A stretch of 64,000 nt of DNA, from positions 52,204,001 to 52,268,000 of the forward strand of contig NC_059435.1 of NCBI RefSeq assembly GCF_021028975.2, read 5' to 3'. The notes below the pieces were generated by a model. That model saw only the letters and a list, made by a program, of their open reading frames with translations, had not been told where the DNA came from and ran no database searches. Below are positions 494 through 60,973 of this stretch, in pieces. The stretch is from Sphaerodactylus townsendi (taxonomy: Eukaryota). A program made the translations under genes and the position numbers. Position 1 is the stretch's first letter, and each line of letters opens with the position of its first letter.

Positions 494-739
494 AGAGCTT
501 GGGCTGGAATGCCGCCTGATTTTTGGAGATTCCTTCCCAGTAGATGAAGTCTTGAAGTTAATGCAGGCATTGTTCTCTGAATGGACCCTTTTCACTTGAT
601 TATTTGGCTTCTCGAATGGATCAAAAGTGCTTTGTGTCCTCTGAACCCTGACTTTTTTGTCCTCTGGAATTGTGTCCAGGGGTTTGATCACAGAATCCAT
701 TCCTTGGCAGTTCCGTGTAGACATCTTTGTGACACATAT
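494..739 (-). CDS. CDK14: CDK14 coding exon 3 (246 nt, phase 0-0): ICVTKMSTRNCQGMDSVIKPLDTIPEDKKVRVQRTQSTFDPFEKPNNQVKRVHSENNACINFKTSSTGKESPKIRRHSSPSS
   Basis: Translation is nearly identical to the recalled human CDK14 N-terminal region. On the minus strand the acceptor is ctcttttttag (AG at 741-740) and the donor gtaagt is at 493-488. The length is a multiple of 3. Confidence 0.97.
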
Positions 740-9830: not shown

Positions 9831-10112
9831 GGGAGCAGCAGTGGCGTAGTGGCTAAGAGCAGTGGCTAAGAGCAGGTGCACTCTGATCTGGAGGAACTGG
9901 GTTTGATTCCCCGCTCTGCCGCTTGAGTTGTGGAGGCTTATCTGGGGAATTCAGATTAGCCTGTACACTCCCACACATGCCAGCTGGGTGACCTTGGGCT
10001 AGTCACAGCTCTTCTGAGCTCTCTCAGCCCCACCCACCTCACAGGGTGTTTGTTGTGAGGGGGGAAGAGCAAGGAGATTGTCAGCCCCTTTGAGTCTCCT
10101 GCAGGCGGAGGC

Positions 10113-10539: not shown

Positions 10540-11815
10540 ATTTCCAGTGAATTTTTTCATCCCATGATGTGAGCAAAGTACAACAGCCTCATTTCTGTCA
10601 TTTTAGCTTCTAGGGAGACCTCAGGCTTGATTTGATGTAGAACCAACTTATTTTCCTTTTTTGGTGGTCTACAGTATCCATAAACCTCCCTTCCAGCACA
10701 ATATTTCAAAGGAATCAACTTTCTCCAGTCAGCTGTCTTTACTGTCCAACTTTTATATGCATACACAGTAACTGGGAATATTATGGCATAAATAATTTTG
10801 ATCTTGGTTGCCACTAACACATCCTTGCACTAAAGAATCTTCTCTAGCTCTTTCATGGCCCCTTCCCAGTCTCTGTCTTTTTCTGATTTCTTAGTTTTGA
10901 TTGATGATGGAGCCAAGCAATAGAAAATATCGAACAAATTCAATTTCTTCATCACCAACTTTAAAACTGTATAATTCTTCAGTAGTCATTTCCCTTGTCT
11001 TCTTGATGTTCAGCTATAATCCTACTTTGACCCTTTCTTCTTTAACCATCATCAGTAGTCCTTTCAAGTCTTCACTATTTTCTGCCAGCAATGTGGCATC
11101 ACCTACATGCCTTGAAATTTTCATATTCCTTCCATCAATTTTCACTCCATCTTCATCTAAATCCAATGCAGCTTTCCTTAGGTTATGCATATAGATTAAA
11201 CAGATAAAATATATCCTTGGTCTGACACTGTTACCAATGGACAACCATTTTGTTGCTTCATATTCTGTCCTAATAATAGCCTCTTGCCCAGAGTATAAAT
11301 TGCACCCCAGAATAATGGAATATCGTAGCGCACCCATTTCTTTTAGAACTAGCCATAGCTTTTCATGATCCACACCATCAAAAGCTTTACTGCTTGTCAT
11401 CTATGAAACACAAGCTGATTTTCTTCTGAAATTTTCTCCTATGTTCCAGTAGCCAACTTGAATGTACAATATGACCTCTTTCTTTTCTGAATCCAGATCA
11501 AACATCAGGCATTTCTCATTCCATATATGATAAAAGACTTTGTTGTGAGATTTTGAGTATCACTTTACTTGAGTGAGAAATTAATGTAATGGTTTGTTAA
11601 TTGGTACAGTATTTAACATCTCTCTTTTTTTGAATTGGATTGTCAATTGAGCATTTCCATTGCTTGGTTTTCCATATTTGTTGGCATGTTGAGATTTCTG
11701 GGGCTTGAAGTTACTAATATCCCATCTACTCCTAGTGACTACTTTCTCCCAATAGCTTTGGGTGCTGCTTTCACTTCACTTGCTAAAACTGCAAGTTCTT
11801 CTTCAAAAGATTCTT
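10540..11815 (-). mobile_element. Degraded Bov-B/RTE LINE (RT region)
   Basis: Fragments KAFDGVDHEKLWLVLKEMG, GVKIDGRNMKISRHVGDATLLAEN (decayed YADD) and LEAKMTEMRLLYFAHIM are typical of RTE-BovB. Frameshifted. Confidence 0.88.
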
Positions 11816-16026: not shown

Positions 16027-19000
16027 CACTAGATAGAACCAGTCTTTGAAATGTTCATATGAGATTAAACCCAAGTAATGCTTAATATATCTCTGAATAA
16101 TCCCTTTTAAACCTGCCTCCAAAAGATCAGATTGGCATTTAATGGATTAGACTCTGTGGGGAAAAGAGAGTTTAAAGATGGAGGAGCAGGTAGTACGATT
16201 TTGTACTCTCATCTGCACCCGCTCTCCACCTACCCATGTTTTGCATTATGCAGAACCACTAGCAGCCTAGATTAAAGTGAATTGAGTGCTAATCTTACAT
16301 GGTGAACACAAAATCTGAAAGCAAGGGCGCCTGCAGTCCCTAAAAAAAATTGTTTCTGTGTATGACTGCATCAGGCAAATGATTTACCCTATGATTTCCA
16401 TAGCTCAGTGAAACTCTCACCTGAGGCTTGCCACATCCCAATGCAATGTCCTAGCATCTACACCATACCAGCTAATAGGACATACCACACAGGAGACTTG
16501 TGACCACCTCCCATCTTTGTGAATGTTAAGATTAATTCAGAAATGAAGCCCAGAGAGAGCTGCCATTTGCCCATGAAAATTAAGCCTCCATTTTCCCAAT
16601 CAAACTAACTTCCACCCCTACTCCCTGGTTGTTTGCCTTGTGAGAAAAACAAACAAAACATAGCCACAGGGAAAGACTAAATTTTCTCTCTGTCTTCTGC
16701 TACTATGTGCAACTGGCAGCCCCCTATCAAATACCCTGACAAATTGTGGTTCTCTTGCATAAACTAGTGGGGCATTGTAGCAACACAATTCTTATCACAA
16801 ACACAGGTTTATCCAGAATGCAGAGATTTCGTGAGTAGCATACATAACTGCAATGCCAACAGGGCATTTTTTTTATAACAACATTTGTTGTATAAGGAAT
16901 ACCAGTATAAAATGTTATTTACTTGTTGATTGGGGCTCACAGACCTCACAAATCTATACTAATGCTTTGTAGGTGAAGCAAAGTTGCTTCCAGTTTGTTT
17001 ATTCAATATTAACAGCCATGTTCATTAAGAAAGCTACACCAACGGGCTTCAGAGTCAAGAAGCCACACTGCCATTCTGTAAATACTTTGTAAAATGCTCT
17101 TGATGAAGCACAACTAGTAAAAATCCCGCATCTTACTCTTCCACGGAGGGAGTGCAATAGGTGGGTTTGTGCGGAGATCTAAAGAAGCCAGACACGGATT
17201 TTATGCATATATAGACATTTTGTATCATAAGTAAAGACAGAATCACTCATACATACACTCGTCACAGAAGTAATTATGTCACTAAAAATTCATGAGATTA
17301 GCATTCAGTACACAGTGAAACACAACTTCTCCTCCTATCAAAATGTAAATTCCTGGCTTAAATACACAGGGGTAAAAAGGTCAGCTCCCGTCACTCATAT
17401 TTAAGAGAAATGCATTTGTAATACATGGCAGAAAGCTTCCAAAGAGGTCTAACTTTCTTCTTCCGTAAGAGAAGCTATCAAAATGATTTATTCCTTAATC
17501 TTAAATGTGCTCTTGAAGAGAAAGTGCCATTGACTTCAATGGGTCTTGCTTCCAGTAATGCATTTTGGGTTAGAGAGCAAAGACAAGAAACAAAATTTTG
17601 TGCTAAATACCTAGATCTGCAAAAAGATATGAATACGATGCTATACTGACGGTGTCTCTAATTTCTTACACTGTTTCTACTGGTACTATTGTCCATTACT
17701 TTCTATATCATGTAGATGTAACTTGATCTCAGTGCTATATTTAAAAACAGTTTAACAGTGCAATTCTTATGCAGAATTACTCCAGTCTAAACCTTTTGAA
17801 ATCAGTGGGCTTTAGATGGAGTAACTCTGCCTAAGACTGTGCTCTAAGGGTATGATGTTCAGTGCACCTTTTCCAGCCCAGGTCTTCTGATTTATTCAGT
17901 GGAATCCACAACAGCAGGGGTTGCAGAAGAACCAGGTGCAAGGAAGACTCCTTCCACACGCCTGCTAAAATGAACTTCATGGCTTGTCTGCTGCTGCAAC
18001 ATATTTGTCAGCCTTTTCCTATGTCCACGAAAGGTTTACATGCTGTTGGTCCTGCACTATCCATTGCCAGGTAAGGGGAGATATAGACAAGCATAGAGAC
18101 ACACACAGAGACACTTAAAAGCATAAGCCAGTACAGCCTCAGGTTGCTGTGCATGCAGAAATATTCTGCTGAGATCTAAAAATCCTCCACGGGCTTTCAT
18201 GAACCACCACACATATATTTTTTTTTACAACAGAAATATAAAGCCGACACAGGTTAACGAACCAAAAAAATATATATTCTGCTGACCTCAGTCATATTGC
18301 TTGGCATTTCCTTCAAGGTTCATTTCAGAACAGCACATTGCTTTCCTCCCATGCACATTAAGGAAAGCCTCTAATTTACTGGAGCCATTTATTCCATCTA
18401 GATCCAGCATGACACAGACTTGTTTGCCACGATGAAAAAGTGATTGGTCACGTCCTTCAGCCACTTGTCCCAGAGGGCACGCAGCCGAGCATATACGAGC
18501 AAAATTGTCTTACGGCATTCTCTTTATACTCTAATAAAGAAGACAGGGAGGAAAAGCCACGGCAGGAAGTGCAGCTCTTAAAACCTTTCCCACCTTTTCC
18601 ACTGGCATTTACAGCAGGGAGGTGATTCCCTCCTGCTTTCCAGGTCATCTCAGGAGGCTGGAGGCTGCATAGTCTCAGGGGTCATTCTGAGCTAGCCAGA
18701 CCATCCTCACACATTCCAGGGAAATCAGAAAGAAAGCCCAGCATGCACGCAGAACGAATACTGCTCAACTTGCAAGCATGTGAGCAGCAGGGTTCGGGTT
18801 AGCAAGACACTCTGGCATTCAATTCACCCCTTATTGTAAAACAAACACAGCCTTACCGTTCTGCTGTAGGATGGATCAGGTTAGTTTCACCTGCGACTCT
18901 TTAGCACGCCTCTAAAAACATTAGCGTTTGGAGTCAGGCCAGGCTCGTTCACAGCAACTGAATTCACAACATCTTTCTGCCCTAGCAAGCTGAAATGCTA

Positions 19001-19217
19001 CGGCTGTACTACAGCTAAGGAAAGGGGGAATCATAAGCAGAAAAACAAAGAAATCCCTTAAGGCAGGATATTCTCAGCAGAGTTGCACTGCAGAGGGTAC
19101 CAACGATTATGAAGGAAGAGGTTCGGCTGCCTGCATTTCAGCAATAGCTCACGGCTCTACGGAAGGAAGAGGGTTTTTCTCTCTCTCGTTTTTTTAAAGA
19201 AAATGTGATGGACTTGC

Positions 19218-19286
19218 CTGTGGAGTTCTCAGGAAGGCAGACTACTCAGGCTCTGCAGCAGCAATGCAGCCAATGTAGCTGTGCAT
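19218..19286 (-). other. CDK14: CDK14 alternative first exon, coding-homologous part MHSYIGCIAAAEPE*SAFLRTPQ, with in-frame TAG (19244-19242) and GC donor
   Basis: 23 codons align without gaps to the recalled human alternative N-terminus MHGYFGCNAAAEPGYSAFVGTPQ. It ends CAG|gcaagt in phase 0, compatible with exon 3. Confidence 0.85.
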
Positions 19287-19347
19287 ATGCTGTCTAGGCG
19301 GTTTACAGTCTCTCTCTTTTCTGGCGGGGGAGGGAGGGTCGAGACTG

Positions 19348-19354
19348 ATTTATA
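19348..19354 (-). promoter_or_regulatory. TATA box (TATAAAT) of the putative internal CDK14 promoter
   Basis: ctgtgcTATAAATcagtc on the minus strand, ~62 nt upstream of the alternative ATG. It implies a TSS near 19320. Confidence 0.55.
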
Positions 19355-20306
19355 GCACAGAGCTTCTTCAGTGAAGTAATGAACTGAAGCCAAAATAAGT
19401 ATAATGGCAATTCAGACAATATTTTCAAGTCAAAGGGTGAAACTAATCACAGCCAGTTCAATAATTTCTCAAGTACGGAAAAAACCACCTGTAAATGAAC
19501 ACCTGAGTGGCAGAGAAAAAGAAACCCCATGAGAGCATTAGGACACAACACAGTAAGTTTGCAGAATAAGTTATAGCACTGTGCAAAATGTAGGCAGTCG
19601 AACCTCTTCATGCCTAGATTAAACATGGCACTTGGAATGAACCTGGCTCCTCCTCCATTGCAGTGGTCCCCAAACAGATGTGAAGCTAAGAACATGAGTG
19701 CATTCAATGATTTGCGTTCAAACCATTTTCCCCAAGCATGCACTCAACAGACATTGTACTTCATGCTGCCATCTCTGAGGGTGTACAGCAGATGGAAAGC
19801 TATTCAACTTACATTATGCCTTCATCCTTCTGTCTGAACTATCTAGCAGATGGCAAGAGTCCACGTTTGATCAAACCACACCAGGCCTGGAAAACTTAAA
19901 TTCCCAGAGCAAAGGTTGCTCAGAGCAAAGTGCACTGTAAACCCATTCATTTGAAGAGGAAAAATAAGCATATAACTTTGCCAATTGTGGCACAAATAAT
20001 ACACACAACCTTTCCCCCAAAGAATCAACCTATATGTATGGTTCCCAGTTGTCTTGGCTTTGTTTTAATCTCAAAAGCAAACTCTTCAGGCAGTTTAATT
20101 TCTAAAAAATATTGTTTGAATCTTGAATGAATCTGAAATGGACCAAAACCAGAACAGAAGATCACATTGCAAAAAAGATCTGGATGAGAGCTGCTACACT
20201 TAGATGGTTCATGCCTAGATTAAACATGACACAGAAGGAGTAAAAACCCAATTCCTTACAGCAAGACACCCCGCCTGCTTCATATTGAAACTGACAACTT
20301 CCTGCC

Positions 20307-20434
20307 CAGAGCCGTAGTGAGAGGGAACTACGCCTGGGGCACATGTGTGCCCTGAGCCCCTGCAATGCCCCGGAACGCCCCCGCACGGCCCCGGTGCAAA
20401 ACACACACACCACTCCCTGGGCGCTACGCCACTG
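20307..20434. mobile_element. GC-rich hAT MITE (CAG(A/T)GGCGTAG-type ends)
   Basis: Ends cagagccgtag / ctacgccactg. 8-bp TSD ttcctgcc/ttccggcc. Confidence 0.8.
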
Positions 20435-22449
20435 TTCCGGCCCCACAAATTCCTGTGCACAGTGACTCTGTTTTAAAGAAGTGCGGAACTCCACGCAGGT
20501 AAAACTGAAGATGCAGTGGGGTTTTTTTCAGATGGAGGGTGTGCTCCATAAGAATGGGGAAGTGGGGATAAGAAATAGCAAGAGAAAGGACCAGCACCTG
20601 TTTGAAGCCTCAGATGCCTCACTGTTCCAACCCCATATGAGTCTTGGGATGCCTGTGTTCTTGCAACTTTGAAGAGATTAAGTGGTATACAAATATTTTA
20701 AACAAATCAATCAAATAAAATGTGACAAATGACCAGGAAAGGAATATGTCCTAACATTGTTAAAAGCTAGTAACTATTACTCTCAAGGTACAAAGATGAC
20801 CTAGTTATGGCTCTAGAGAATCAAATATATTGGAGGGCTGGAGGCAAGTTAGAATAACTAATAAGAGAATGGAAAGACAAACAAAGATTTTTTAATGGAA
20901 ATAAAGGGGCTTCTTAGAGATGCTTTAAGGAAAGGGGAACGAAAAAGGTAAACAGTTGCTAGTAATCAAGGTTGTGTAGTGCACACAGATTTATGCCAAT
21001 GTTGTGAAGCACGCACAGATTTAAGCATTCACAATGGGGGCTCTTCTTTATATCCGGTTCTTATTGTGAGATTCATGTGTGCCACTTCCTAATAAAAGAC
21101 GCACAACCACCAGCATTTTGGCTGTTGAAACTTTACAGATTATTAACCAATGTATCAGTTATAAGTAACTTTAATATTTTCCATTATGCAATGGACCCTA
21201 GCACACAGGGACTTGGTTGATTTCTTCTCCTGTCTTTTGATGTAGTTTGGCTCATTCAGTGTCAAAGGTGACTGACCCCCAGGATAAGATATGGGAAATA
21301 CTATGAGGACTGATTATAGAGGTTCTGTCTTACAGCCAAGTCTAGATATCATGGAATTCAAACTAAATGCATAACAGCATTACATAATGCAGGACTCTGC
21401 TGTGCAGGTATATGACAGCTCCTTACATCTGCATCAATTCATGAAATAAATGTATTGAAATAAATAATACACTATTTTGCCACTCTTTCGTATGCCCACA
21501 TCAGCAAACATGCTGCAAGGGTAGTAATTTTTTTAAGTTAGTAGCATGTACATGCTGGTATCTTTAACACTTAGTTTGCAGAACCTGCTATATTAGGTCA
21601 GGTCATCCAGTCCATCTGTCAGTAGTCTTGCTCCATGAGCAGCTGCTACCCCAGGCAGCTATGGATTCAGCTTTCCTCTACTGGTCACACCCAGCTACTT
21701 GACATCCATAATACAGAGAAGTGTCTCTTGTTACAAAGAAGGACCTGAACTGAATGGAATTCTCACGCTCCACAAGAAAGGGAAAATATCTTCAAATCAA
21801 GCATACCACACGTTTCAGAATGACCGAAAAACAACACCAAAGTATACCAAAACAAATTGGTACAAACTACTAGTTAGTAAGTTAAGCCAACTTTTCAAGA
21901 AAGAGCCAAAAGGTAAAAGATTATAAAAGCACCTTCTACGTTGAGGAACATGGGAGTGTAAGAACAACCATGCTGAATCTGGTAGACAAATGGTCTACCA
22001 AGCACAGCATCCTGTTTTATGCTGAGATCATACAGCACCAAAGACTTACAAGCACAGCTGAGACGCCAACACTTTAGCTGTTCACCAGCACTGTAATTTC
22101 AACAGTAGCTTCCCATTGAATCATTCCAACAAACAGCCATTGGTGAAACTGGATTAACGTGAATCTCCATGCACTGAAGCCACTAGAGCTTTGGTTAATA
22201 TCACAGTCTGTCCAAGCAGAAGTGCTTTGTATCAGCAACATCTTTTGTTACACATAAAATAAATCATCTTCAATAGGTCTCAGTAGAGTTTACAGAGGCC
22301 CTTCATGCAGAAATGTTTACAGAAACCTGTGGTAATTTTTCTTCAAAATAATATAAACCATATAGGAGAGAATCTATAAAAGATACTGAATAATGTTTGA
22401 AGGGATTACACAAAGTTCCCAATTTGACAGGTAACTCATATTATTAAAT

Positions 22450-24680: not shown

Positions 24681-24794
24681 TGGTTCTGGTGGGTTTTCCG
24701 GGCTGTGTGGCCATGGTCTGGAGGATCTTGTTCCTAACGTTTCGCCTGCATCTGTGGCTGGCATCTTCAGAGGTGTATTACAGAGGGAAGTCTG
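24681..24794 (-). mobile_element. Penelope-like element terminal repeat (pLTR) fragment
   Basis: Same sequence as the copies at 32512, 49998, 52776 and 56139, and it contains a hammerhead motif typical of PLE pLTRs. Confidence 0.8.
24733..24773 (-). ncRNA. Minimal type I hammerhead ribozyme motif (intact core)
   Basis: CCU-CUGAAGA-UGCCAGC(CACAGAU)GCAGGC-GAAA-CGUU-AGG: stem I CCU/AGG, conserved CUGANGA and GAAA boxes, stem II, palindromic ACGU stem III, GUU cleavage triplet. Confidence 0.72.
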
Positions 24795-34680: not shown

Positions 34681-34811
34681 ATAGGTACCATTCTCTACAG
34701 CACAGTGTTGATTTTTTAGTGATTATAATAGCCTACCAAGACTACCAACTAAATCTTTATTCAGAAATGCAGTACTACTATTTAGCTGTCCAAGCTTTTT
34801 ATCTGTCTGTA

Positions 34812-35647
34812 TGTCCGGGGGTCGCCACGCCGGCTTGCCCCGGACTCGGATGGCCGGGAGGCGGGGCCGACAGCGCGACGACAGCGGGCCAACGCAACGC
34901 CCGGACCCGCGGCAGAAGCACCAGCGGGGGGGCGGAGCAGATGGACGACAGGCGCAAGGAGGCACAGCTGCGGCTTATCCGGCAGCTGCAGCCCCTCTCG
35001 CCATCGACGGGGCGCGGCCGGGACGATGGCTAGGCCGGAAACACCCCCGAAGACCCGGGAAGCCTTCAAAAGGCGAGGACCGCCGGGAGAGCAAGGCTGG
35101 CCACAGCAGGGCGTGGGAGGGTTGTGCGGGAGCCCAAGGAGGTCGGGGAAAGTGTCGTGGGGGAAGGGAGGTGGAGCAGAGAGAGAGAGAACGACGAAAG
35201 CAGAAGGAAGGGGAGTGAGAGAGAGTGGAGAAACCGAAGGAAGGGGAGTGAGAGAGAGTGGAGAAGCTGAAGGAAGGGGAGTGAGAGAGAGTGGAGAGGC
35301 AGAAGGAAGGGGAGTGAGAAAGAGTGGAGAAATGGAAGAGACGGGGGACTGGGAGCGTGGAGGCAACCTGGGGAAAAGAAAGGAGACCAAGGAGGGGAGA
35401 GAGAGGCTGACCGGGAAAGGGACAGCAGACTCCAGTAGGGGAGCTGCCGACCCCAGACACCTGTAGGAAGAGACCAACAGAGATTGAGGACTGCCCTCAC
35501 CCCCGGAGGGCACCCTGTGGTTTAGGCAGCTGACTGCATTGAGACCCCCTAAGACCAGGGCTACAGACGAGGAGTCCAACACCTCGGAAAGGGACGGTGA
35601 GACTGCTTGTCAGCCACGACCACAGGAGGGGGAGGGGGAACGCCACA
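34812..35647. mobile_element. GC/CpG-rich solo LTR (836 bp, Gypsy- or ERV-type)
   Basis: TGT...ACA termini, perfect 5-bp TSD CTGTA (34807-34811, 35648-35652), and a sharp GC transition at both ends. Confidence 0.78.
35200..35331 (+). repeat. 33-bp purine-rich minisatellite x4 inside the LTR
   Basis: Unit approximately gcagaaggaaggggagtgagagagagtggagaa. Confidence 0.93.
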
Positions 35648-38003: not shown

Positions 38004-39704
38004 AAGAACATAAGAACATAAGAACAAGCCAGCTAGATCAGACCAGAGTCCATCTAGTCCAGCTCTCTGCTACTCACAGTGGCCCACCAGGTGCCTTTGG
38101 GAGCTCACAGGCAGGAGGTGAAAGCAATGGCCTTCTGCAGCTGTTGCTCCCGATCACCTGGTCTGTTAAGGCATTTTCAATCTCAGATCAAAGAGGATCA
38201 AGATTGGTAGCCATAAATCGACTTCTCCTCCATAAATCTGTCCAAGCCCTTTTTAAAGCTATCCAGGTTAGTGGCCATCATCACCTCCTGTGGCAGCATA
38301 TTCCAAACACCAATCACACGTTGCGTGAAGAAGTGTTTCCTTTTATTAGTTCTAATTCTTCCCCCCAGCATTTTCAATGTATGCCCCCTGGTTCTAGTAT
38401 TGTGAGAAAGAGAGAAAAATGTCTCTCTGTCAACATTTTCTACCCCATGCATACAATTTTTGTAGACTTCTTAATCATATCCCCCCTCAGCCTCCTCTCC
38501 AAACTAAAGAGTCCTGCAACTACGCTGCCAGCCTCTCCTCATAGGGAAGGTGCTCCAGTCCCTCAATCATCCTTGTTGCCCTTCTCTCTGCACTTTTTTT
38601 CTATCTCCTCAATATCCTTTTTTTTGAGGTGCTTGGCTGACTACAGAACTGGACACAGTACTCCAAGTCGCGGTCGCGATCACTTGCTTTATATAAGGGC
38701 ATGACAATCTTTTGCAGTTTTATTTATCGAATTCCTTTTCTAACGCATCCCCAGTGCATAGAGTTTGCCTTTTTCACAGCTTTACTATGCATTTTGAGTT
38801 GACATTCCCATGGGAACTATCAACCTAAGGCGCCTAAATCCACTTTCTCCTGGTTCAGACTGATAGCACTGACCCCTGTAGCAGGTGTGTATGTGAAGTT
38901 TGGATTTTTTTGCCCCTATGTGCATCACTCTTTTATCATTTTAGCTACATTGAACTACCGCATTTGCCATTTTCTGAGCCCACTCACCTAATTCTGTATC
39001 CAAGGCAACCCGGCTTTGGAGCTGTACCTTTCAAGCAATCCTTTGTGGTTCTCTACCAATTCTGCTACACATAATTTGGTATCATCTGCAAACTTGGCCA
39101 CCACGCTACCCACCCCTACTTCCAGGTCATCTATGAATAGGTTAAAGAGCACTGGTCCCAAAACGGATCCTTGGGGGACAATTCCTCACTCCCGACCATC
39201 TCTCCATTGCTTGAAGAACTTCCCATTTACACCCACTCTTTGTTTCCTGTTTCTCAACCAGTTTTTAATCCATAGGAGGACTTCCCCTCTTATTCCTTCA
39301 CTGCTGAGTTTTCTCAACAGTCTCTGGTGAGGAACTTTGTCAAAAGCCTTTTGGAAATCCAAGTAGACAATGTCCACCAGTTCACCCCTGTCCACATGCC
39401 TGTTTACACCCTCAAAGAACTCTAGTAAGTTTGTAAGACAGGATTTGCTTCTGCAAAAGCCATGCTGACTCTTTCTCAGCAGGTCTTGCTTTTCTACACG
39501 TTTAATAATTTTATCTTTAATGATAGATTCTACTAATTTACCAGGAACAGATGTCAAACTAACTGGCCTGTAATTTCCCGGGTCCCCTCTAGATCCTTTC
39601 TTAAAGATTGGTGTGACATGGCCATCTTCCAGTCTTCAGGGATGGAGCCTGATTTCAGGGATAAGTTGCATATTAAAGTGAGAAGATCAGCAATTTCATG
39701 CTTG
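38004..39704 (-). mobile_element. 5'-truncated CR1 LINE (~1.7 kb, RT domain to 3' tail)
   Basis: SQHGFCRSKSCLTNLLEFFE..DIVYLDFQKAFDKVPHQRLL and RTRGHTLK..RKHFFTQRVIGVWNMLP, an (ATGTTCTT)n tail, and flanking duplication AATTTAAGA. Confidence 0.95.
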
Positions 39705-60941: not shown

Positions 60942-60973
60942 CTCGTCGAAACCGCTGTCATCTTTCTTCAAGG
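60942..60973 (-). CDS. CDK14: CDK14 coding exon 2 (32 nt, phase 1-0): (A)LKKDDSGFDE
   Basis: Minus strand reads tcttctttttttaaag|CCTTGAAGAAAGATGACAGCGGTTTCGACGAG|gtaagt. It matches human ...IALKKDDTTFDE, which directly precedes ICVTKM, and joins exon 3 in frame. Confidence 0.93.

What the first reader, a model, noticed from the sequence alone, without database searches (positions are those of the whole stretch)
19218..19354. CDK14 alternative first exon has an in-frame amber stop, turning a coding N-terminus into a 14-codon uORF
Seen: TATAAAT, then ATG CAC AGC TAC ATT GGC TGC ATT GCT GCT GCA GAG CCT GAG TAG TCT GCC TTC CTG AGA ACT CCA CAG|gcaagt. Established (recalled): a human CDK14 isoform starts MHGYFGCNAAAEPGYSAFVGTPQ-ICVTKM, and the TAG sits at the second Tyr. 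The first ATG has a weak context (C at -3 and +4). After splicing, the exon 3 ATG of MSTRN (A at -3) is only 39 nt past the stop and in the same frame. Inference: this promoter would give a shorter kinase by leaky scanning or reinitiation under uORF control. Alternatives are amber readthrough, A-to-I recoding of UAG to Trp, or NMD. It also suggests the exon may be conserved for regulatory rather than coding reasons.
Basis: partly seen in the sequence, partly recalled or inferred. Interest (0 to 1): 0.8.

Follow-up and report, generated by a model that had tools for sequence, protein, structure and literature searches.

The report
CDK14 alternative first exon lost its frame
In this squamate reptile, an old alternative first exon of the kinase gene CDK14 that still codes for protein in birds carries a real stop codon and six other amino-acid changes, so it can now serve only as an untranslated leader; this is an ordinary lineage-specific loss, and its use in mRNA is not yet shown.

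Summary
On the minus strand, ATG 19286-19284 opens 14 codons, TAG sits at 19244-19242, and the exon ends at 19218. It is in frame with the CDK14 exon at 739-494, whose MSTRN ATG lies 39 nt past the stop.

- **The TAG is real.** A depth-60 contig from the same species has it, and so does a diverged contig from a relative.
- **The exon is the CDK14 alternative first exon.** Two birds have it open (MHGYFGC...GTPQ) at 59/69 nt identity.
- **The GC donor is ancestral.** Both birds share it, with 12/12 following bases identical.
- **Coding constraint looks lost.** Seven of the eight changed codons alter the protein.
- **Conservation extends beyond the exon.** About 1 kb around it is conserved, including a more conserved exon-like block at 19014-18857.
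- **Splicing is not shown.** RNA from a related species covers only about 19340-18888. It runs through the 19218 donor, and no spliced read was seen. The evidence is 9 read pairs, and a filter may remove spliced reads.
An out-of-frame ATG at 737-735 precedes the main start.

Verdict: the alternative N-terminus was lost in this lineage and the exon persists as a leader or regulatory DNA. A selected uORF switch is unproven. Interest is low to moderate.

The parts
19346..19352 (-). TATAAAT motif 60 nt upstream of the ATG; possible core promoter element
   Evidence: Read. Birds have TGTAAAT here. RNA reads of a relative reach to about 19335, closer to the box than the usual ~30 nt. Its role as a TATA box is therefore unproven.
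19218..19286 (-). Exon 1b, the coding-equivalent part of the CDK14 alternative first exon (23 codons, phase-0 end)
   Evidence: 59/69 nt identical to the exon of Mesitornis (L001:10001-10069, NCBI model P0056) and of Turdus (L003).
19242..19286 (-). 14-codon ORF plus stop (candidate uORF): ATG 19286-19284, TAG 19244-19242
   Evidence: The TAG is confirmed in the X1 contig (depth 60.6) and in the diverged X8 contig. Birds have TAC at this codon.
19206..19217 (-). GC-type splice donor and start of the intron (gcaagtccatca)
   Evidence: 12/12 identical in both birds, and the bird gene model splices here. No spliced read was seen in the RNA laid.
19061..19205 (-). Non-conserved spacer between the two conserved islands; highest RNA depth in the relative
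   Evidence: 66/153 aligned columns identical to Turdus. Summed depth of the two orientation columns is 5.7-7.7 in X15.
19015..19060 (-). Conserved polypyrimidine tract ending in TTAG (acceptor-like)
   Evidence: 38/46 identical to Turdus.
18857..19014 (-). Exon-like conserved non-coding block X. It begins CTG TAG, a stop in phase 0. Candidate donors are GCAG|GTGAAA at 18891|18890 and AACG|GTAAGG at 18857|18856.
   Evidence: 108/124 identical to Turdus over 19014-18891, about 95% over the first 80 nt, falling to about 57% after 18856. The bird copies differ in length by numbers not divisible by 3. Its function is inferred only.
18888..19340 (.). Stretch covered by RNA-seq reads of a related species (run X15); strand not determined
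   Evidence: 18 reads (9 pairs), all lying fully on the stretch, with no joints or loose ends. Nothing lies at 18400-18880 or 19376-20200.
494..739 (-).
   Evidence: Fragments 92-100% identical to CDK14 from many vertebrates.
60942..60973 (-). Small canonical CDK14 exon 2 coding (A)LKKDDSGFDE, phase-0 end. It places exon 1b inside the intron between exons 2 and 3.
   Evidence: Compare the canonical N-termini in P0054, P0059 and P0101.

Best explanation
Exon 1b is an old alternative first exon of CDK14. In birds, and in human by recall, it encodes a 23-residue alternative N-terminus.

- **What happened.** In the squamate lineage of this window the exon lost its reading frame. Tyr-15 TAC became TAG, and six more residues changed. 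The start codon, the GC splice donor and about 1 kb of surrounding non-coding sequence stayed conserved.
- **What the exon can do now.** It can act only as a non-coding leader.
- **Consequence for the protein.** If transcripts from this promoter are spliced to the exon at 739, the kinase must start at the MSTRN ATG (724-722) or at the next in-frame ATG (700-698). That gives the short N-terminal form, which gene models in other species also predict.
- **The 14-codon ORF.** It is most likely a by-product of the loss. Together with the out-of-frame ATG at 737-735, it would dampen translation by the usual leaky-scanning and reinitiation rules.
- **Shown:** the sequence, the reality and shared ancestry of the TAG, orthology, the open frame and GC donor in birds, the conservation pattern, and transcription of the region in a relative.
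- **Inferred:** that the exon is spliced to exon 3 in this species, where translation starts, and any regulatory effect of the short ORF.
For: - Sequence and frame.
- The TAG is present in an independent read-derived contig at depth 60.6 and in a relative's diverged contig.
- Bird protein P0056 (NCBI, Mesitornis) starts MHGYFGCNAAAEPGYSALLGTPQ joined to ICVTK. Its DNA (L001) and that of Turdus (L003) show the open frame and the same GC donor.
- Eight codons differ from the birds and seven of them change the protein. The 10 differences versus Turdus split 3/2/5 over codon positions 1/2/3, so there is no third-position bias.
- The exon body (59/69) is no better conserved than its non-coding neighbours: donor +12 nt 12/12, block X 108/124.
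- RNA reads of a related species start near 19335-19340, just downstream of the TATA-like motif, and are confined to 18888-19340. The region is therefore a discrete transcription unit, not intron background.
- Models starting at MSTRN exist in other species: P0012 'CDK14 isoform 7' of Pongo, and P0057 of Naja.
Against: - No read spliced at 19218 was seen. All 18 RNA reads lie fully on the genome and cross the donor, so the exon as drawn may be little used in this clade.
- The RNA is from a related species, not this one. Depth is very low (about 2 over the exon) and the library gives no strand.
- The tool silently drops human-like reads. That would preferentially remove reads reaching into the conserved exon 3, so neither presence nor absence of splicing can be concluded.
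- Only two birds could be compared. No other squamate, turtle, crocodilian or mammal DNA of this exon could be reached, and the human peptide is recalled, not fetched.
Confidence: 0.55

Rival explanations
1. Dead exon inside a conserved regulatory block. The exon no longer contributes to CDK14 mRNA in this clade. The sequence is kept because it overlaps a conserved non-coding element, such as an enhancer or a promoter for a short unspliced RNA. The reads in the relative would be that unspliced non-coding RNA.
For: - RNA coverage in X15 is continuous over 18888-19340 and highest in the non-conserved spacer. There are no joints and no partly laid reads.
- Conservation extends about 900 nt beyond the exon, and parts are more conserved than the exon.
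- Coding constraint is gone.
Against: - The GC donor and the next 10 bases are identical to birds (12/12), and the ATG is kept. This fits continued use as an exon.
- No poly(A) signal was seen by eye near 18888.
Confidence: 0.28
2. Selected uORF switch. The TAG was fixed because a 14-codon uORF usefully controls translation of a short CDK14 from this promoter.
For: - The ATG is kept in the window species and the TAG is shared with a diverged relative.
- The geometry permits it: a short ORF, then 39 nt to an in-frame ATG with A at -3.
Against: - The weak start context is ancestral, not new.
- The out-of-frame ATG at 737-735 with G at -3 lies only 26 nt after the stop and overlaps the main start.
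- The ORF's residues drifted: G3S, F5I, N8I, G14E.
- No translation data exist.
- If the leader runs on to 18891 or 18857, four more upstream ATGs follow.
Confidence: 0.1
3. Recoding keeps the long isoform. Either amber readthrough occurs, or A-to-I editing of UAG to UIG (Trp) at 19243 restores a 23-residue N-terminus.
For: Eight in-frame codons after the TAG remain open up to the donor, and five of them are identical to the Turdus codons.
Against: - There is no stable local duplex: MFE -52 kcal/mol against -54.2 for shuffles, z = +0.52.
- The bases after the stop (UCU GCC) match no readthrough motif that I know of (recall).
- Six replacements at otherwise invariant residues, plus L19P in the relative, argue that the peptide is unconstrained.
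- The tool lists no mismatch at 19243, but depth was only about 2, below its listing threshold.
Confidence: 0.03
4. Assembly error or rare allele: the true sequence is TAC or TAT.
For: None was found. Logan contigs can hide minor alleles.
Against: The X1 contig at word depth 60.6 and the diverged contig of organism D both read TAG.
Confidence: 0.02

Closest known systems
CDK14 (PFTK1) isoform with the alternative N-terminus MHGYFGC...GTPQ (human isoform recalled; bird model P0056 from NCBI, Mesitornis unicolor)
   Same: Same gene, same position upstream of the ICVTKMSTRN exon, same start codon and context, same phase-0 GC donor, and 59/69 nt identity.
   Different: The frame is closed by TAG at codon 15 and six other residues are replaced, so this isoform cannot be made here without recoding.
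Short CDK14 forms starting at MSTRN (e.g. P0012 'CDK14 isoform 7' of Pongo abelii; P0057 of Naja naja)
   Same: This is the protein expected from a leader that carries no open upstream frame. The ATG at 724-722 has A at -3.
   Different: Those are database gene models from other transcripts. Nothing here shows that this exon feeds that start.
Upstream-ORF control by leaky scanning or reinitiation (GCN4/ATF4 type; established knowledge)
   Same: A short ORF with a weak start ends shortly before the main ATG.
   Different: No stress-responsive arrangement of several uORFs is shown. An overlapping out-of-frame ATG intervenes. There is no evidence of translation or of selection on the ORF.
GC-AG introns (a minor class of U2-type introns with an otherwise near-perfect donor, often alternatively spliced; established knowledge)
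   Same: CAG|GCAAGT is the textbook strong GC donor, and it is conserved from birds to this squamate.
   Different: Use of this donor has not been observed in the reads available.
Amber/W editing (hepatitis delta virus) and programmed stop-codon readthrough
   Same: An in-frame UAG is followed by an open frame.
   Different: There is no supporting structure and no known context motif, and the peptide is not conserved.

Membership tests
CDK14 alternative first exon (exon 1b) | Lies on the gene's strand in the intron upstream of the ICVTKMSTRN exon | tested here: met
   Exon 2 is at 60973-60942, exon 1b at 19286-19218 and exon 3 at 739-494, all on the minus strand.
CDK14 alternative first exon (exon 1b) | Sequence orthology to the annotated exon of other species | tested here: met
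   120 nt at 85% identity, E 1.6e-33, to L001 at the first exon of NCBI model P0056. The Turdus locus L003 aligns across the whole region at 70% over 968 nt, and the exon itself is 59/69 identical to Turdus.
CDK14 alternative first exon (exon 1b) | Phase-0 donor that joins in frame to ICVTK | tested here: met
   CAG|GCAAGT at 19218|19217. The same GC donor is in both birds, with 12/12 following bases identical.
CDK14 alternative first exon (exon 1b) | Open reading frame from the ATG to the donor | tested here: not met
   TAG at codon 15, confirmed in reads.
CDK14 alternative first exon (exon 1b) | Transcribed and spliced to the next coding exon | tested here: inconclusive
   RNA of a relative covers 18888-19340 but is unspliced at 19218. 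There are only 9 pairs, and the filter may remove spliced reads.
Regulatory uORF | An ATG and an in-frame stop upstream of the main start in a real mRNA leader | tested here: inconclusive
   The ORF exists and the region is transcribed in a relative. The leader's structure is not established.
Regulatory uORF | Start and stop kept in related species | tested here: inconclusive
   The TAG is kept in organism D's diverged contig. The ATG lies in the end zone of that contig, where differences are not listed.
Regulatory uORF | Ribosome occupancy, or an effect on translation of the main ORF | not testable with these tools
   No Ribo-seq or reporter data are available.
Stop-codon recoding (readthrough or A-to-I) | Stable duplex or a known context around the stop | tested here: not met
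   Fold of 19340-19100 gives z = +0.52, and 136 of 200 shuffles fold as well.
Stop-codon recoding (readthrough or A-to-I) | A>G mismatches at 19243 in RNA only | tested here: inconclusive
   Depth is about 2 in X15, below the tool's listing threshold, and the RNA is from another species.
GC-AG intron | GC at +1/+2 with consensus at the other donor positions, conserved in orthologues | tested here: met
   CAG|GCAAGT in the window, Mesitornis and Turdus.
GC-AG intron | Observed splicing at this donor | tested here: inconclusive
   No joint or loose end at 19218 in 18 reads.

The most novel reading that the evidence does not exclude
Exon 1b and the exon-like block X (19014-18857, which begins with an in-frame stop) may form an ancient, conserved non-coding leader or unproductive-splicing module of CDK14, at least as old as the bird-squamate split. 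It would set how much short-form kinase is made from an internal promoter. In this squamate lineage the coding option of exon 1b was given up entirely, and the remnant 14-codon ORF was kept as a working uORF.
Probability: 0.15. Interest if true: 0.45.

Novelty: new member of a known kind. Interest (0 to 1): 0.25.

Why it matters
This is a clean example of an alternative N-terminus being lost in one lineage while its promoter, start codon and unusual GC splice site stay conserved. It suggests that the 23-residue CDK14 N-terminus is dispensable in at least some squamates. It also suggests that much of the exon's conservation is at the DNA or RNA level. For annotation, gene models in this clade should not carry the MH..GTPQ isoform over by homology. 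It does not open a new mechanism: turnover of alternative first exons and accidental uORFs are both common.

Tried and rejected
- **Word searches.** Three protein word searches looked for other alternative N-termini: exon 3 alone, a spliced fragment P0035, and the N-terminus of P0056. Only P0056 carried it. The tool's length window excludes full-length 451-aa isoforms, so this blank says nothing about them.
- **Other loci.** The Naja naja locus (L002) and the panda locus (L004) reach only 10 kb and 18.7 kb upstream of exon 3 and do not contain exon 1b. The Weddell seal gene range was too long to fetch. So no other squamate and no mammal DNA of the exon was compared.
- **Non-coding RNA.** An Rfam scan of 17500-20500 found nothing.
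- **Repeat check.** The transcribed stretch is not repeated elsewhere in the window.
- **RNA run X14.** It laid no read at all, so it is no test.
- **Big search not used.** The protein's identity is not in doubt, and clustering at 50% identity would hide N-terminal isoforms.
- **Literature.** Searches gave no paper on CDK14 N-terminal isoforms or uORFs.
- **A GT>GC donor lesion.** I considered this and rejected it once the birds showed the same GC donor.

Full report
**1. Observation**

- TATAAAT lies at 19352-19346.
- ATG lies at 19286-19284, with C at -3 and C at +4.
- Fourteen codons follow (MHSYIGCIAAAEPE), then TAG at 19244-19242.
- Eight more in-frame codons follow (SAFLRTPQ), ending CAG at 19218, then gcaagt.
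- The next CDK14 coding exon starts at 739 behind a long pyrimidine tract and ends at 494. It codes ICVTKMSTRN...SSPSS.
- Its MSTRN ATG (724-722) has A at -3. In a 19218>739 splice it would lie 39 nt past the TAG, in the same frame.
- A small canonical exon coding (A)LKKDDSGFDE lies at 60973-60942. Exon 1b therefore sits in the intron between canonical exons 2 and 3. Canonical exon 1 is outside the window.

**2. Is the TAG real?**

I laid four runs on 18400-20200.
- Run X1 has the same species label as the window. It gives one 1899-nt contig at word depth 60.6 that matches 18431-20200 with a single difference, at 18756. The TAG and the GC donor are therefore in the reads. X1 may be the sample the assembly was built from.
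- Run X8 (organism D) holds both near-identical and diverged contigs; one has 33 differences in 428 nt.
- The diverged X8 contig over 19189-19308 differs in the listed part only at two places. At 19231, CTG becomes CCG (Leu>Pro, after the stop). At 19248, CCT becomes CCA (synonymous). It keeps TAG.
- The stop is therefore fixed and older than that split.
- Four further differences of that contig lie within about 30 nt of its ends, where the tool does not list them. The state of its ATG and donor is unknown.

**3. What the exon is**

Word searches with exon 3 and with a spliced fragment found one protein with the alternative N-terminus. This is P0056, an NCBI model from the bird Mesitornis unicolor. 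It starts MHGYFGCNAAAEPGYSALLGTPQ joined to ICVTK.
- Its contig (L001) has the exon at 10001-10069.
- A second bird locus, Turdus rufiventris (L003), has the same exon open, with ...SAFLGTPQ.
- The window aligns to both at 59/69 nt in the exon.
No tool fetched it.
- The exon-3 region aligns to Naja naja at 85% over 345 nt, including intron flanks. Birds align there only over the exon itself. The window is therefore from a squamate.

**4. What changed**

- Both birds have the same GC donor, CACAG|GCAAGTCCATCA, and the 12 bases after the junction are 12/12 identical to the window. The GC donor is therefore ancestral and still constrained, not a lesion. CAG|GCAAGT is the strong consensus expected of functional GC donors (established knowledge).
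- The weak start context (C at -3 and +4) is also shared with the birds, so it is not new.
- Against the birds, eight codons differ. One is synonymous against both (H2). Codon 18 varies between the birds themselves (Leu or Phe). Five are replacements: G3S, F5I, N8I, G14E and G20R. One is the nonsense change Y15*.
- The 10 nucleotide differences versus Turdus fall 3/2/5 on codon positions 1/2/3. The two birds differ at a single base.
- If the recalled human peptide is right, all five replacements and the stop fall on the squamate branch, at residues unchanged in birds and mammals. That is the pattern of lost protein-level constraint.

**5. Why it is still conserved**

- Conservation does not stop at the exon.
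- The exon with its flanks is one island.
- A spacer at 19205-19061 is unalignable (66/153).
- A second island follows. It starts with a pyrimidine tract ending TTAG at 19015 (38/46).
- It continues through 19014-18891 at 108/124, about 95% over the first 80 nt.
- It reaches two donor-like sites: GCAG|GTGAAA at 18891|18890, present in Turdus but deleted in Mesitornis, and AACG|GTAAGG at 18857|18856, present in both birds.
- Identity then drops to about 57%.
- This block looks like a non-coding exon. It begins CTG TAG, and its length differs between species by numbers not divisible by three.
- More conserved patches follow down to about 18400.
The whole neighbourhood, not the 14 codons, carries the signal.

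**6. Expression**

- No RNA run of the window's species was offered. Two RNA runs of a related species (organism C, sharing about 55% of 31-letter words) were laid.
- X14 gave nothing, so it is no test.
- X15 gave 18 reads (9 pairs), all lying fully on the genome with no joints or loose ends. They are confined to about 18888-19340. Nothing lies in the 480 nt below or the 820 nt above.
- This is a discrete transcribed unit that begins just downstream of the TATA-like motif. It runs through the 19218 donor and is deepest in the non-conserved spacer.
- It is not a repeat.
- Caveats:
  - The RNA is from another species.
  - Depth over the exon is about 2.
  - Both read orientations occur, so the strand is unknown.
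  - The tool removes human-like reads without notice. That would hit reads reaching into the highly conserved exon 3.
- I therefore cannot decide between three readings: a long first exon spliced at 18891 or 18857, mixed use of the GC donor, or an unspliced non-coding RNA.

**7. Translation logic (inference)**

- For local bookkeeping only, a script listed the ATGs of four possible leaders.
Searches were done exon by exon, by reference, and the joined search was left out.
An ATG at 737-735 follows (G at -3), 26 nt after the stop and out of frame. It opens 38 codons ending at 623-621, and so overlaps the main ATG at 724-722.
- It would capture part of the scanning or reinitiating ribosomes.
- A further in-frame ATG at 700-698 has a strong context (G at -3 and +4).
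- If the leader runs on to 18891 or 18857, four more upstream ATGs are added.
- Any kinase made would be the short form beginning at MSTRN or MDSVIK. Database models in other species also predict this (P0012, P0057, P0035).

**8. Recoding alternatives**

- The 241 nt around the stop fold no better than shuffles (z = +0.52).
- Rfam finds nothing.
- The bases after the stop match no readthrough motif I know (recall).
- The peptide has drifted. I rate recoding at about 3%.

**9. Verdict**

- The best reading (0.55) is lineage-specific loss of the alternative N-terminus. The exon survives as a non-coding leader, and the short ORF is a by-product.
- The main rival (0.28) is that the exon is no longer used in CDK14 mRNA and persists as part of a conserved regulatory block.
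- A selected uORF switch (0.10) is possible but has no positive evidence.
- This is an ordinary kind of event, and its interest is low to moderate.

Noticed in passing
window 18857-19060 (minus): An exon-like conserved non-coding block 200 nt downstream of exon 1b. A pyrimidine tract ends in TTAG. About 125-160 nt follow at 87-95% identity to birds, and then come conserved GT donors. The block begins with an in-frame stop. It may be a conserved untranslated or 'poison' exon of CDK14, or a conserved enhancer.
   Followed up: partly
window 18400-18700 (minus); L003:10001-10075: Gene models of two passerines, Turdus rufiventris (P0053) and Pitangus sulphuratus (P0100), place a different first coding exon (MRPLGSHPGEIPQ..REK) in this conserved region, about 600 nt downstream of exon 1b. 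In the window that ATG is absent, and the donor-like AAAAG|GT is out of phase with respect to the nearest window ATG (18648).
   Followed up: partly
run X8 laid on window 18401-19308: Organism D's run gives both near-identical contigs (1 difference in 157 nt) and strongly diverged contigs (33 in 428 nt) over the same stretch. This may be two deep haplotypes, a hybrid genome or a mixed sample.
   Followed up: no
window 34700-35600: A G+C-rich island (51% against about 40% around it) with a 33-nt tandem repeat at 35196-35362 (4.1 copies, 91% matches). It lies in the long CDK14 intron. It may be a CpG island or a minisatellite.
   Followed up: partly
window 39189-39635 (minus); also 38201-38470 and 11017-11400 (minus): Retrotransposon remains. 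The first stretch matches Pfam RVT_1 (E 2.7e-15). The other two look like LINE reverse-transcriptase or C-terminal fragments but gave no Pfam hit.
   Followed up: partly
window 24733-24773: Another first-stage note on this window (s1-740390) reports a minimal hammerhead ribozyme motif in the sense of the CDK14 pre-mRNA. I did not examine it.
   Followed up: no
window 698-700 (minus): The in-frame ATG of MDSVIK has the best Kozak context in the region (G at -3 and +4). Several database models start there (P0034, P0035, P0084, P0086).
   Followed up: no
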